A program made the position numbers and the translations under genes. This document shows, piece by piece, positions 50,001 through 53,000 of a stretch of 64,000 bases of DNA; position 1 is the stretch's first letter, and each line of letters opens with the position of its first letter. Below the pieces are notes generated by a model. It was not told the DNA's origin and did not search any database. It saw nothing but the letters and a program-made list of their open reading frames with translations. Source of the stretch: Mizuhopecten yessoensis (taxonomy: Eukaryota); NCBI RefSeq assembly GCF_002113885.1, contig NW_018405746.1, positions 8,660 through 72,659 of the forward strand, in the 5' to 3' direction.

Positions 50001-53000
50001 CAATACACAAAGACGGAATAGAGATGTAGGATTGAAGTATGTTGTCCAACCCGTCGGGTCGGAGATTGACCAAAGACTATGCCGGTTGTTATCCACTGCA
50101 TGTTGTGAGAGGCAGTATTGGAGCTAAGGCTTGTTTTTGTGTTGATGCATTCTGATTTCAAATTGCCAACCTAATACACCTCATGTATACCGTCTTATCT
50201 TCAGAAATGTGCAGTGTTCTGAAAAAGCATTTGTCCACATCATCTCTTTAAAGTTATGCATTCATGACATGTAGACAGCTACACCAACAGTGAACACAAT
50301 GTCAATAGCTCAAATTTTTGAAAAAAGTGCTATATTTTTCCAATCCATGAGAAGTATAACACAGTCTCAGATGAAATTTTGATAGGGAACCTAAATTGTT
50401 ATATATTATCCCCTTTCTTAACGAGATCCAGTGCAATGGGAAAATAATCCAGCTGAATTAAATTTTCAAGCCCATACATGCATAATGTCATATTTTTGAG
50501 TTTTAAAAGGAAAACAGCCTGTCTTATAAGGCACAGGAAAAAAAATAGCAAAATTTAAATTGTGCAAAAAAGAAAATCAGCTTTACTCCTTCAGCACTCA
50601 CCTTGTTTAAAATTGTCTTAAATTTGATGTTTATAATCGTTACTAGCAATTCTTGAACATAAATCATATAATAAAACACATTCCTCGTTATTATTTTTAA
50701 CTCCGTATTTGTAAAACTCATTTTGCACTTTTTATACGCCAGTCAAATTTGACGGGAGTATTATGGTATGGTGTTGTCCGTCCGTCTGTCTGGCGTAAAC
50801 TTTGTTTGTCCGGCAATCTCCTCCTACATTGTTCGACTGATCTCTTTGAAACTGGAAGTTATTGCCATTTGTTTATTTCAGTATTTGATTTTTTTGTCCG
50901 GAGATCTTCTCCTACATTTTTCAACCGATCTCTTTGAAACTTGGTATACTTGATATTCATGATATGAAGTTGTGTCTCCCTTAAAAGAATTTTGATTCAA
51001 CGATTTTTTGCAAAATTTATTGCCTTTTGTTCATTTCAGTATTTGATTTTTTGTCCAAAGATTTTCTCCTACATGTTTTATAGCATATCAGCTAACCACT
51101 CTTAGAACGATGCAGATCTTATTTCAATGTAAGAAAGTATATAACACTATATGGCATTCGACGGGTGTATTTTGTTCCGCCCCGTGGTACTCTTGTTGTT
51201 TAAATCATTATAGATATGCCACTGGTCATCTTGATTACAACATACCACAGTTACAGGTTTTTCTGTTGTAAGAATTGAAAGTAAACTGATGTTTTATAGT
51301 GAGTTTCAAAGGAGACGGATAACGGAAAACCAAGCACCTGGCTCTGGGGCTGGATACTCTAAAGTGTGTAAGTAAAGATTCAATAAAAAACATATTTGTA
51401 TATAAACATGTATTTCTTTATAACATACTTACAATTACATTTTTTAGGTCACCTGAGACAAAGTCTCAAGTGACCTATTGCGATCGCCTTTTGTCCGTCG
51501 TCGTCCGTCGTGCGTCCGTAAACAATTTACATTTTCGACTTCTTCTCCAAAACCCCTGAACCAATTTCAATGAAATTTTGCAGGGACCTTCCATGGACAA
51601 AGGTCAACAAAANTAAATATATCAGGTGACCGTTAAGGCCCATGGGCCTCTTGTTTATGTCTTGTCGCAGAAATTTCCAGAACAACTATTAAGATTTTTC
51701 AGTTTGTTTTATATTCATTTGCTAATAAAACATGTATCTTTCATATGTAATCATGCGATGGTTTCAGTAAAGGCTGCAGAGAAATTGTAGTTATATAAGT
51801 AAAATGAAAACTATGCTTATTTAGTCATGAACAAACTGAATTTGAAGCTTATCATTTATATGGTTCTGAACATCTATATTTGAGTATCATTTCCTTGCAG
51901 CATCTAGAGATGGACATATTCAGGTGTTTAATGACGAAAATGTAAATCCCAACAAGCCTGCTCAAGCTAAACATCAAGTTCAGAAGTGTAATGATGAAAA
52001 TGTGAATCCCAACCTTGCTCCAAAAGTTCAAATATACAATGACGAGAATTTGAAGCCCAGTGTGCCTCCACAAGTTCAAAGTCAGGTCCAAGTGCATAAT
52101 GACGAAAATCTGAATCCCAGCGTTCCCTCACAGGTACAAGGTCAAGGTCAGGGCATAGGTTTTAATCAGAATGGTTCGTTGTATGGACAGTTTATTGAAG
52201 AGTTCAACATTTACTGTAAAAGATAGTACAATTTCATTCTGTACTACCAAGTCAAAAAACTGGTAGTGCACAATTAATATTTATAGTGTTGATGATTTCA
52301 TGGGTATTTATCTGCATGCTGCATAAAAGAGATTAGTAATTTACTTAGCTTTATGTACACTCTAGATAACATTCAGTTCTGTTCTTTGGTTAATCTGATA
52401 ATCATGTGATGTTACAATACTAGAGTTTTAAATCGACGCTGAACCACAGGTCTATAAGTCTGACATGTAGCTACATCTGAGCTACATTATTTGTAGCTAA
52501 TAAATGTTGTACTTAGCAACAAGGGTATGTCAGTGAACAAGATAAACACATCAGGGTAAAAACATAAAATTCTTCAATATTTTGTTGAATATTGTTAAAT
52601 ATTGTACTTATTAACAAATTAAAGCACGGTATTCTATAAACTTTCTTAGTGTATACATGTTTTTATGGTTTTCATGATTTTTGGAACCACAATTATAAGA
52701 ACATTGAATACAACTTAGCCTTGTTCATTGACATGAACTTACGTCTATTGTATGATCAACCAATTGCAAGCAAATGTAATAACAAATTACTCTGTAAACT
52801 TTAATTGTGGAAGTTAAAAACTGGAAAAGGTTATGTTTAAAATACGTATTAAGACAGGTTTTTTTCATTTTATTACTCTCTTATATCAGCGAATCATGTA
52901 CTGCAAGGAGAAACTACTAATGGGCATAGAGGAACTGTCTTTTGAAGAGCTTCGTGCCAAACATTGGTGGGCTAAACGTAAAAGGGAGCAGGAAATCAAG

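What the first reader, a model, noticed from the sequence alone, without database searches (positions are those of the whole stretch)
51918..52133. Four tandem ABBA-like/DEN repeats in BUB1 where the ABBA1-KEN2-ABBA2 cassette normally sits
Seen: one exon encodes [33 protein letters not shown] and [11 protein letters not shown], separated by Q/P/V linkers. The DNA is diverged but the frame and the NDEN core are kept. Known: ABBA motifs (hydrophobic-x-[ILV]-[FHY]-x-[DE], e.g. BubR1 ITVFDEN) and KEN/DEN-type degrons bind the APC/C co-activator Cdc20. Inference: this is an amplified multivalent Cdc20-docking or degron array between the TPR and GLEBS, an architecture I do not recognise from model organisms.
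Basis: partly seen in the sequence, partly recalled or inferred. Interest (0 to 1): 0.7.

Follow-up and report, generated by a model that had tools for sequence, protein, structure and literature searches.

The report
Scallop BUB1 tandem ABBA/DEN motif array
One exon of the scallop checkpoint kinase gene BUB1 encodes four conserved tandem copies of a short motif of the kind that docks the cell-division regulator Cdc20, in a gene copy that normally loses such motifs; this is an unusual variant of a known theme, and its binding is untested.

Summary
Exon 51901-52133 (+) encodes four units, [IV]Q[VKI][FCYH]NDEN[VL][NK]P, spaced 20, 16 and 20 residues apart.

- **Gene.** It is the BUB1-like kinase of Mizuhopecten yessoensis (database model P0001): TPR, GLEBS, a later ABBA+KEN pair and a kinase with an intact catalytic loop. 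It has no KEN1, KEN2 or ABBA2.
- **Paralogue.** A second gene on contig C727 (BUB1-beta-like) keeps KEN1, one ABBA1 (FTVFNDENANP), KEN2 and ABBA2, and has no kinase.
- **Other species.** Other bivalves, an annelid and a snail each yielded a protein that combines all these parts.
- **Duplication.** Trees place both scallop copies together (support 87-100). This points to a scallop-lineage duplication that is not among the 16 listed in the literature I read.
- **Conservation.** All four units are orthologously conserved in Pecten and Ylistrum. Motif cores have dN/dS 0.13 and linkers 0.52.
- **Origin.** The units are 67-73% identical in DNA to each other, 52-60% to the paralogue's ABBA1 and 31-35% to its ABBA2. 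They arose by tandem duplication of ABBA1.
- **Structure.** The array lies in a predicted disordered linker.

Most likely it is a multivalent Cdc20/Cdh1-docking array, but binding is inferred only. Each unit also fits the KEN-box flanks (N-x-E-N-x-x-P). ABBA arrays are already known in MAD-like proteins, so this is a new variant of a known kind. RNA support for the exon is partial.

The scan had earlier noted the missing KEN1 in this same window (s1-517213). Nothing was found on other DNA.

The parts
51901..52133 (+). Repeat exon (233 nt; enters with 2 nt completing a codon and ends in phase 0) = residues 161-238 of the database protein P0001
   Evidence: AG/GT boundaries; translation; exact match to P0001 162-238; RNA raw reads cover it at about 3x with zero depth in the following intron
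51918..51950 (+). Unit 1, [11 protein letters not shown]: fits the ABBA consensus at positions 3, 4 and 6; positional counterpart of ABBA1 (exon starts SRDG, against SRGG in the paralogue)
51978..52010 (+). Unit 2, [11 protein letters not shown]: off the ABBA consensus (K at position 3, C at 4; IQKY in Pecten and Ylistrum); keeps N-D-E-N-x-x-P
52026..52058 (+). Unit 3, [11 protein letters not shown]: fits the ABBA consensus; the Ylistrum orthologue is degenerate (VQMISNEN)
52086..52118 (+). Unit 4, [11 protein letters not shown]: fits the ABBA consensus; His at the aromatic position in all three scallops; ends 6 residues before the GLEBS exon
48014..49668 (+). TPR (Mad3_BUB1_I) coding exons 48014-48076, 48512-48655 and 49472-49668; no KEN1 exon upstream anywhere in the window
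   Evidence: Pfam PF08311 E 1.4e-15 and 9.4e-14; exon map; tblastn with KEN1-bearing N-termini finds only 48014-48076
51300..51367 (+). Short linker exon ([22 protein letters not shown]), which sets the reading phase for the repeat exon
   Evidence: Spliced joint 49668->51300 (GT..AG) in an RNA contig of X2 and one raw read of X21; sequence; P0001 139-160
52890..53055 (+). GLEBS (Bub3-binding) exon, [23 protein letters not shown]..., phase 0, directly follows the repeat exon
   Evidence: Sequence; joint about 53055->53425 seen in an X2 contig and 6 X21 reads; AF2 strands 246-255 then a helix
56553..56690 (+). Canonical Bub1-type ABBA (FSIYDE) followed by KEN (VEKENG), the 'ABBA3/ABBA-other' position
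59745..63739 (+). Kinase domain exons (HGDIKPDN catalytic loop, DFG); the gene runs off the window end
   Evidence: Pfam Pkinase E 2.8e-5 on one exon; motifs in P0001; exon map

Best explanation
The exon encodes a four-unit tandem array of an ABBA1-derived short linear motif. It lies in the disordered linker between the TPR domain and the Bub3-binding GLEBS motif of the scallop Bub1-type kinase. Shown or well supported: an ancestral MadBub gene (KEN1-TPR-ABBA1-KEN2-ABBA2-GLEBS-...-kinase, as still found in other bivalves) was duplicated in the scallop lineage. One copy (contig C727) kept KEN1 and the cassette and lost the kinase. The copy in this window lost KEN1, KEN2 and ABBA2 but multiplied the ABBA1 unit, about 16-20 residues long, to four copies. 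This happened before Mizuhopecten, Pecten and Ylistrum diverged, and the motif cores have since been kept by purifying selection. Inferred: each unit is a low-affinity docking site for the WD40 propeller of the APC/C co-activator Cdc20, and perhaps Cdh1. [quoted passage not shown] Together the units would make kinetochore-bound Bub1-Bub3 a multivalent Cdc20 recruiter, adding to the retained FSIYDE/KEN site. This would raise local Cdc20 concentration for checkpoint-complex assembly or for Bub1 phosphorylation. The redundancy among units would explain why each species tolerates one off-consensus unit.
For: The motif is present and unique in the window. The gene is BUB1-type: TPR, GLEBS and a kinase with HGD/DFG. 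The paralogue has KEN1, FTVFNDENANP, KEN2 and FTIHVE but no kinase. Mercenaria, Mactra, Tegillarca, Owenia and Bradybaena each gave a protein combining KEN1, ABBA1 (xQxFxDEN), ABBA2 and a kinase. A literal KEN2 is present in the three bivalves; Owenia and Bradybaena have REN at that position. Tegillarca's model is partial at the N-terminus, so its KEN1 is not seen. The oyster is listed as a single MADBUB in Tromer's dataset. Scallop BUB and MAD form a clade with support 100/97, 87/89 and 94/91 with AU p=0.045 against the alternative. The four units are orthologous in three genera with conserved spacing 20/16/14-20, and [DN]EN is invariant in 12 of 12 units. dN/dS against Ylistrum is 0.13 for cores, 0.52 for linkers and 0.105 for the whole gene. 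Units are 67-73% identical in DNA to each other, 52-60% to MAD ABBA1 and 31-35% to MAD ABBA2. Residues 151-243 have pLDDT below 50 and no secondary structure. The ABBA consensus Fx[ILV][FHY]x[DE], the need for positions 3, 4 and 6, the blade 2-3 pocket and the role of the Bub1 ABBA motif in recruiting Cdc20 to kinetochores come from PMC5179498.
Against: No binding data exist, and no complex model could be made with these tools. Unit 2 violates the ABBA consensus at positions 3 and 4 (K and C here; K and Y in the other scallops). The most strictly conserved residues are E-N, not the aromatic, which fits a KEN-receptor reading at least as well. Published work finds that Bub1-like copies lose this region and that the cassette acts as a complete module, so isolated ABBA1 copies may behave differently. 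The dN/dS values rest on only 43 and 28 codons. The tree built from TPR and GLEBS columns alone does not reject an older duplication (AU p=0.12).
Confidence: 0.6

Rival explanations
1. The units act mainly through the KEN-box receptor on top of the Cdc20/Cdh1 propeller. In this reading the array is a row of KEN-like (DEN) boxes. It would make Bub1 an APC/C substrate (degron array) or a pseudosubstrate-type competitor, and the ABBA-like residues would be secondary.
For: Every unit in Mizuhopecten reads N-D-E-N-x-x-P. This matches the extended KEN consensus (D or N at P-1, Pro at P+3) everywhere except K->D (consensus from PMC3690534). In the Acm1-Cdh1 structure an NEN sequence occupies the KEN receptor, with E and N making the KEN-type contacts, and GxEN of Xkid is read as a degenerate KEN box. 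E-N is invariant in 12 of 12 units, whereas the aromatic position is lost in one unit of two species.
Against: The core Lys is absent in all units. 'DEN box' occurs in only one paper of the library and is not an established degron class. DEN is also part of ABBA1 and ABBA2 in undivided MadBub proteins, where a separate true KEN2 lies next to it, so DEN there is not simply a KEN substitute. The hydrophobic-x-hydrophobic-aromatic part is conserved in 9 of 12 units.
Confidence: 0.2
2. The array binds a partner other than APC/C co-activators, or acts as a spacer that tunes the TPR-GLEBS geometry. Its resemblance to ABBA/KEN motifs would then be only inherited history.
For: After losing KEN1, KEN2 and ABBA2 the copy no longer has the MCC-type context in which ABBA1 works. 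The invariant Q at position 2 and the N before D are not part of the ABBA consensus.
Against: The conserved positions coincide with those that define ABBA and KEN motifs. No other known motif was recognised: Pfam gives nothing significant on the exon, and the representative search finds only the protein's own cluster.
Confidence: 0.08
3. The array is a slowly decaying relic of the ancestral cassette region and has no present function.
For: Each species has one off-consensus unit (C in Mizuhopecten unit 2, NNEN in Pecten unit 1, VQMISNEN in Ylistrum unit 3). The exon's overall dN/dS (0.24) is higher than the gene's (0.105).
Against: Four orthologous units with conserved spacing persist at synonymous divergence of about 0.5-0.9. 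Core dN/dS is 0.13 against 0.52 for the linkers. KEN2 and ABBA2 of the same region were completely erased over the same period, which shows what decay looks like here.
Confidence: 0.07
4. The exon is not part of the mature mRNA, that is, a gene-model artefact or a retained pseudo-exon.
For: The junction 52133->52890 was not listed in the read lay. One RNA contig runs 23 nt past the donor, and another starts 91 nt before the GLEBS acceptor.
Against: Raw RNA reads cover the exon and the GLEBS exon at about 3x, with zero depth across 52146-52849. Phases fit on both sides. The exon is 233 nt, and the linker exon plus this one total 301 nt, so skipping it alone or with the linker exon shifts the frame before GLEBS and the kinase. 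The same exon sits in the NCBI models of three species.
Confidence: 0.02

Closest known systems
ABBA1 motif of the ABBA1-KEN2-ABBA2 cassette of BubR1/Mad3/MadBub (Tromer et al. 2016, PMC5204127; Di Fiore et al. 2016, PMC5179498)
   Same: Same place in the protein (between TPR and GLEBS) and the same exon start as ABBA1 of the scallop paralogue. The sequence type is the same ([FIV]x[IV][FYH]xDEN; human ITVFDEN, scallop MAD FTVFNDENANP). DNA identity to the paralogue's ABBA1 is 52-60%.
   Different: Four copies instead of one. No KEN2, no flanking tryptophans, no ABBA2 and no KEN1 in the protein. It sits in the kinase-bearing BUB copy, which the literature says loses the cassette.
ABBA repeat arrays in MadBub-family proteins (context i of Tromer et al. 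2016: MAD of Physcomitrella, basidiomycetes, stramenopiles)
   Same: Several ABBA-type motifs in tandem within a disordered part of a MadBub-family protein.
   Different: Those arrays were reported in MAD-like or undivided proteins of plants, fungi and stramenopiles. This one is in an animal BUB-type copy, derives from ABBA1, replaces the cassette, and each unit also carries a KEN-like N-D-E-N-x-x-P.
Bub1 ABBA/KEN site near the Mad1-binding region ('ABBA3/ABBA-other'; Di Fiore et al. 2015 as cited in PMC5179498)
   Same: A Cdc20-docking motif on the kinetochore-bound Bub1-type protein. The scallop protein also has this site (FSIYDE ... KEN, 56553-56690).
   Different: Different location (after GLEBS), a single copy, and a true KEN box next to it.
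Acm1 A motif plus NEN/KEN pseudosubstrate region (He et al. 2013, PMC3690534)
   Same: It combines an ABBA-type (A motif) site with xEN/KEN sites that occupy the KEN receptor. This is the precedent that a non-Lys xEN can bind there.
   Different: Unrelated yeast protein. There the motifs are separate along the chain; here they overlap within one 11-residue unit, so one unit probably cannot fill both pockets of one propeller (inference).

Membership tests
ABBA motif (Cdc20/Cdh1-binding short linear motif) | Consensus Fx[ILV][FHY]x[DE], with positions 3, 4 and 6 required for binding; position 1 may be degenerate (PMC5179498) | tested here: met
   Units 1, 3 and 4 (IQVFND, VQIYND, VQVHND) fit at positions 3, 4 and 6, with I/V at position 1 as in human ITVFDE. 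Unit 2 (VQKCND) does not fit.
ABBA motif (Cdc20/Cdh1-binding short linear motif) | Lies in an intrinsically disordered region | tested here: met
   In the AlphaFold2 model with a 14-sequence alignment, residues 151-243 have pLDDT 29-41 and no secondary structure, between a confident TPR (1-150) and GLEBS.
ABBA motif (Cdc20/Cdh1-binding short linear motif) | Motif positions conserved among orthologues more than the flanks | tested here: met
   Four orthologous units in three scallop genera; core dN/dS 0.13 against linkers 0.52; small numbers of codons.
ABBA motif (Cdc20/Cdh1-binding short linear motif) | [quoted passage not shown] | not testable with these tools
   No complex prediction or binding assay is available here.
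ABBA1-KEN2-ABBA2 cassette | KEN2 (with flanking Trp) between two ABBA motifs at constrained spacing, co-occurring with the N-terminal KEN1 | tested here: not met
   No KEN before residue 580 of P0001, no Trp in the exon, and no KEN1 exon in the window. The cassette is intact in the paralogue on C727.
KEN-box degron | K-E-N core | tested here: not met
   All four units have D-E-N; orthologous units have DEN or NEN.
KEN-box degron | Extended consensus: D/N at P-1 and Pro at P+3 (PMC3690534) | tested here: met
   N-D-E-N-x-x-P in 4 of 4 Mizuhopecten units, 4 of 4 Pecten units and 2 of 4 Ylistrum units (consensus).
BUB-type (Bub1-like) paralogue of the MadBub family | TPR + GLEBS + C-terminal kinase retained; KEN1 lost | tested here: met
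   PF08311 on two exons; MYCKEKL...ELSFEELRA; HGDIKPDN and DFG; no KEN1.
Independent MadBub duplication with parallel subfunctionalisation | The two paralogues of the lineage are each other's closest relatives, and outgroup species keep one undivided gene | tested here: met
   Clade support 100/97, 87/89 and 94/91; AU against the alternative p=0.12 and 0.045. Mercenaria, Mactra, Tegillarca and oyster have undivided MadBub proteins. Support is good but not decisive, and no second copy was sought in those species.

The most novel reading that the evidence does not exclude
The scallop Bub1 copy did not simply shed the APC/C-inhibitory cassette as in the 16 described MadBub splits. Instead it converted the cassette into a composite array. 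Each unit could engage either the ABBA pocket or the KEN receptor of Cdc20/Cdh1. Kinetochore-bound Bub1 would then hold several co-activator molecules at once, or switch between docking modes. That would be a new way to divide checkpoint labour between Bub1 and BubR1, and an exception to the 'predictable' subfunctionalisation path.
Probability: 0.2. Interest if true: 0.65.

Novelty: new variant of a known kind. Interest (0 to 1): 0.5.

Why it matters
MadBub duplications are a textbook case of repeatable subfunctionalisation. In nearly every described split the Bub1-like copy loses KEN1 and the whole ABBA-KEN-ABBA cassette. The scallop genes add a further, apparently undescribed, independent split in animals. 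Here the Bub1 copy kept one element of the cassette, multiplied it fourfold and has maintained it under selection. If the units bind Cdc20, this gives a natural experiment on how the number of ABBA sites on kinetochore Bub1 affects Cdc20 recruitment and checkpoint strength. It would also test whether ABBA1 can work outside the cassette. The likely impact is moderate: it interests people who study spindle-checkpoint evolution and short linear motifs, but it does not change the known mechanism.

Tried and rejected
- Tandem Repeats Finder on 51500-52600 found no array; the repeat is visible only in register or at the protein level.
- Pfam on the exon gave only insignificant hits (Mad3_BUB1_II E 0.37).
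- An exhaustive HMMER search of 1.84 billion representatives with the 77-residue exon found only the protein's own cluster plus two unrelated repetitive proteins. No comparable array is detectable outside scallops at that sensitivity, although single 11-residue motifs are below its reach.
- A word search restricted to residues 150-262 found only the three scallop BUB proteins, the scallop MAD copy and one MadBub.
- I tested whether units 2-4 are remodelled KEN2/ABBA2 rather than copies of ABBA1. MAFFT paired unit 3 with ABBA2 and unit 2 loosely with KEN2. However, DNA identity to the paralogue's ABBA2 is at background (31-35%) and all units share the ABBA1-type flank, so I rejected that reading without being able to exclude it fully.
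- A possible degenerate fifth unit at the start of the intron (GIGFNQN, 52152-52199) is only 29-35% identical to the units. It is not supported.
- The look-up of encoding contigs had no record for the Pecten protein, so Pecten was analysed at the protein level only.
- The organism of transcript P0006 (the nearest undivided MadBub, with Tegillarca) could not be named.
- The read lay did not list the 52133->52890 joint.
- No paper in the library combines 'MadBub' with molluscs.
The exon was searched by reference, and afterwards the database protein P0001 returned by that search was used. Codons were mapped exon by exon inside scripts only.
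Full report
**1. Observation**

Window 51903-52133 (+) translates without a stop to 77 residues. They hold [33 protein letters not shown] and [11 protein letters not shown], joined by short Q/P/K/A-rich linkers. The stretch is an exon:
- A polypyrimidine tract and AG end at 51900.
- GT starts at 52134.

A six-frame census of the 64-kb window for [ILVF]x[ILVK][FYHC]NDEN gives four hits, all here. Tandem Repeats Finder sees nothing at the DNA level. In register, the four 48-nt units are 67-73% identical.

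**2. The gene**

Exon pieces on the + strand carry these features:
- The two halves of the Mad3/BUB1 TPR domain (PF08311, E 1.4e-15 and 9.4e-14).
- A GLEBS-type Bub3-binding motif ([23 protein letters not shown], from 52890).
- A later FSIYDE...KEN pair.
- A kinase with HGDIKPDN and DFG.

I searched the repeat exon by reference against 1.84 billion representative proteins. It returned, at 100% identity, a 1151-residue database protein, P0001. Its source names it 'mitotic checkpoint serine/threonine-protein kinase BUB1-like [Mizuhopecten yessoensis]'. P0001 maps exon by exon onto the window, and the repeat exon is residues 162-238.

The reading phases fit:
- The TPR exon ends at 49668.
- A 68-nt linker exon (51300-51367) leaves one base.
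- The repeat exon supplies two bases and ends in phase 0.
- The GLEBS exon starts in phase 0.

The repeat exon is 233 nt, and together with the linker exon 301 nt. Skipping either would shift the frame before GLEBS and the kinase.

**3. RNA evidence**

Two spliced joints were seen in RNA contigs and raw reads of this species: 49668->51300 and about 53055->53425. Raw RNA reads (run X21) cover the repeat exon and the GLEBS exon at about 3x, with zero depth over 52146-52849.

The joint 52133->52890 itself was not listed. One contig of X2 runs 23 nt into the intron, and another starts 91 nt before the GLEBS acceptor. This is probably unspliced RNA or DNA in those libraries. Inclusion of the exon is therefore well supported indirectly, but not shown by a junction read.

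**4. A paralogue and the ancestral state**

The genome holds a second TPR-bearing gene on contig C727. It is a paralogue, not an allele. The TPR exon is 75% identical in DNA, and the only other matches between the two regions are short repeat-like stretches that are not colinear.

The C727 gene encodes:
- MASETDDWELSKENVQPLRQGR (KEN1).
- One ABBA1 (FTVFNDENANP), with KEN2 in the same exon.
- ABBA2 (FTIHVE) and GLEBS.

It ends just after FAIYDE, without a kinase (protein P0021, 'BUB1 beta-like').

Homologues were found with P0001 and P0021 in:
- the clams Mercenaria and Mactra;
- the ark shell Tegillarca;
- the annelid Owenia;
- the snail Bradybaena;
- several unnamed transcripts.

Each of these yielded a protein with KEN1 (not visible in the partial Tegillarca model), TPR, ABBA1 of the form xQxFxDEN, ABBA2 (FSVHVDEN type), GLEBS and a kinase. 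A literal KEN2 is present in the bivalves. Owenia and Bradybaena have REN at that position. Tromer's dataset likewise lists oyster as one MADBUB. I did not search those species for a second copy.

The scallop pair thus looks like a lineage-specific split.

| Tree | Columns used | Support for scallop BUB+MAD clade | AU p for the alternative |
|---|---|---|---|
| | 431 N-terminal columns | 100/97 | not tested |
| | TPR+GLEBS only, 239 columns | 87/89 | 0.12 |
| | everything up to ABBA3, cassette columns removed, 419 columns | 94/91 | 0.045 |

The BUB copy sits on a long stem (0.7-1.2 changes per site). The clade is sister or adjacent to Tegillarca and one transcript. I put the scallop-lineage duplication at about 85%. 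It is not among the 16 duplications listed by Tromer et al. 2016, and no paper in the library links MadBub to molluscs.

**5. Conservation of the array**

Pecten maximus and Ylistrum balloti BUB1-like proteins carry the same four units, in the same order and with the same spacing.

| Species | Unit 1 | Unit 2 | Unit 3 | Unit 4 | Spacing (residues) |
|---|---|---|---|---|---|
| Mizuhopecten | IQVFNDEN | VQKCNDEN | VQIYNDEN | VQVHNDEN | 20/16/20 |
| Pecten | IQVFNNEN | IQKYNDEN | VQIFNDEN | PQVHNDEN | 20/16/14 |
| Ylistrum | IQVFNDEN | IQKYNDEN | VQMISNEN | SQVHNDEN | 20/16/14 |

E-N is invariant in 12 of 12 units. Each species has one unit off-consensus. The Ylistrum exon was read from genomic DNA (L009:11728-11940).

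| Region (Mizuhopecten against Ylistrum, Nei-Gojobori) | dN/dS |
|---|---|
| Repeat exon | 0.24 |
| 11-residue motif cores (43 codons) | 0.13 |
| Linkers (28 codons) | 0.52 |
| Whole gene | 0.105 |

Synonymous divergence (dS) is about 0.5-0.9. The cores are therefore constrained about as strongly as the rest of the protein. KEN2 and ABBA2 of the same region have vanished without trace.

**6. Origin**

Unit 1 is the positional counterpart of ABBA1: the exon starts SRDG here and SRGG in the paralogue.

| Comparison (48 nt in register) | DNA identity | Identical codons at same-residue positions |
|---|---|---|
| Units against each other | 67-73% | 5/12 to 7/9 |
| Units against the paralogue's ABBA1 | 52-60% | 1/9 to 4/7 |
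| Units against the paralogue's ABBA2 | 31-35% | too few to judge |

This points to tandem duplication of an ABBA1 unit of about 16-20 codons, around or after the gene duplication and before the three genera split. A protein alignment can also pair unit 3 with ABBA2. I consider that pairing an alignment artefact of the shared xVHxDEN pattern, but I cannot exclude it.

**7. What the units are**

By the published definition the ABBA consensus is Fx[ILV][FHY]x[DE]. Positions 3, 4 and 6 are required, position 1 is degenerate, and the motif binds the groove between blades 2 and 3 of Cdc20. Units 1, 3 and 4 qualify. Unit 2 does not (K at position 3; C, or Y in the other scallops, at position 4).

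The array lies in a predicted disordered segment. Residues 151-243 have pLDDT 29-41, between a confident TPR and the GLEBS strands.

Each unit also reads N-D-E-N-x-x-P. That is the extended KEN-box consensus (D/N at P-1, Pro at P+3) apart from Lys->Asp. An NEN sequence of Acm1 is known to sit in the KEN receptor with KEN-like contacts. The ABBA acidic position is the D of DEN, so the two readings overlap within one unit. I infer that one unit probably cannot fill both pockets of one propeller at once.

**8. Mechanism (inferred)**

Bub1-Bub3 is a kinetochore scaffold. Its known ABBA/KEN site recruits Cdc20 to kinetochores (Di Fiore 2015, as cited). The simplest reading is that the four extra units are further weak Cdc20 (or Cdh1) docking sites. 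They would give avidity or hold several co-activator molecules near the retained FSIYDE/KEN site, the Mad1-binding region and the kinase.

I give this reading, including Cdc20/Cdh1 binding at either pocket, about 0.8 in total. Of that, 0.6 is for the ABBA-pocket docking version and 0.2 for a mainly KEN-receptor (degron or pseudosubstrate) version. The remainder is split:
- relic without function, about 0.07;
- other partner or spacer, about 0.08;
- gene-model artefact, about 0.02.

**9. Comparison with what is known**

[quoted passage not shown] I also saw arrays at the ABBA3 position in other lophotrochozoan MadBub proteins (see section 10).

What is different here is the combination:
- an animal protein;
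- the kinase-bearing BUB copy;
- derivation from ABBA1;
- replacement of the cassette;
- the cassette's partners, KEN1 and KEN2, are gone.

Both 2016 papers state that Bub1-like copies lose the cassette and that it is conserved only as a complete module. The scallop gene is an exception to that rule. It is a new variant of a known kind, not a new kind.

**10. Noticed in passing**

The items seen outside the finding are listed separately in the field for that purpose.

**11. Limits**

- Binding was not tested.
- Only three scallop genera and a handful of outgroups were available.
- The dN/dS figures rest on few codons.
- The duplication date is bounded only by Tegillarca and an unnamed transcript.
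- One splice junction of the exon was not directly observed.

Noticed in passing
G000 contig C727, about 108046-87600 (- strand); loci L005-L008: BubR1/Mad3-like paralogue of the window's gene. It has a KEN1 exon (108046-107777), an ABBA1+KEN2 exon (96848-96618), ABBA2, GLEBS (about 92900) and a colinear middle region. It ends after FAIYDE with no kinase. Reverse-transcriptase-like ORFs lie further downstream (about 80900-78000).
   Followed up: partly
window 54190-54378 (+): A long poly-Gln/His tract (26 residues of Q/H from P0001 residue 343) in a BUB1 coding exon. It is absent from the Pecten, Ylistrum and Tegillarca proteins and from the scallop paralogue, so it is a species-specific expansion.
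   Followed up: partly
window 49858-50033 and 51442-51793: Intronic repeats with very high depth in RNA runs (tens of thousands in contig word depth; 70-250x in raw reads). Many reads run on into unrelated sequence, so these are expressed interspersed repeats. They include a single N at 51613.
   Followed up: no
protein P0013 (Bradybaena similaris MadBub), residues about 773-1016: The land-snail protein has three to five repeats of about 52 residues. Each holds two ABBA-like motifs (LNIYCD, LFI[FY]HD) and a KEN box. This is another amplified Cdc20-motif array, at the ABBA3 position.
   Followed up: no
protein P0012 (unnamed lophotrochozoan MadBub), residues 646-673: Three exact FTIYEE motifs at an 11-residue period, a tight ABBA array at the ABBA3 position.
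   Followed up: no
L009:1001-2012 (Ylistrum balloti BUB1-like model P0004, residues 1-238): The N-terminal 238 residues of the model are a repetitive extension (MVGCLQTEPDRDGV-type units) that the Mizuhopecten and Pecten proteins lack. It is probably a gene-model artefact and contains no KEN box.
   Followed up: no
window 52134-52156 and 52799-52889: Contigs of one putative RNA run (X2) extend into both ends of the intron after the repeat exon. This suggests unspliced transcripts or DNA in that library. If the intron were retained, the frame would stop at 52224-52226.
   Followed up: partly
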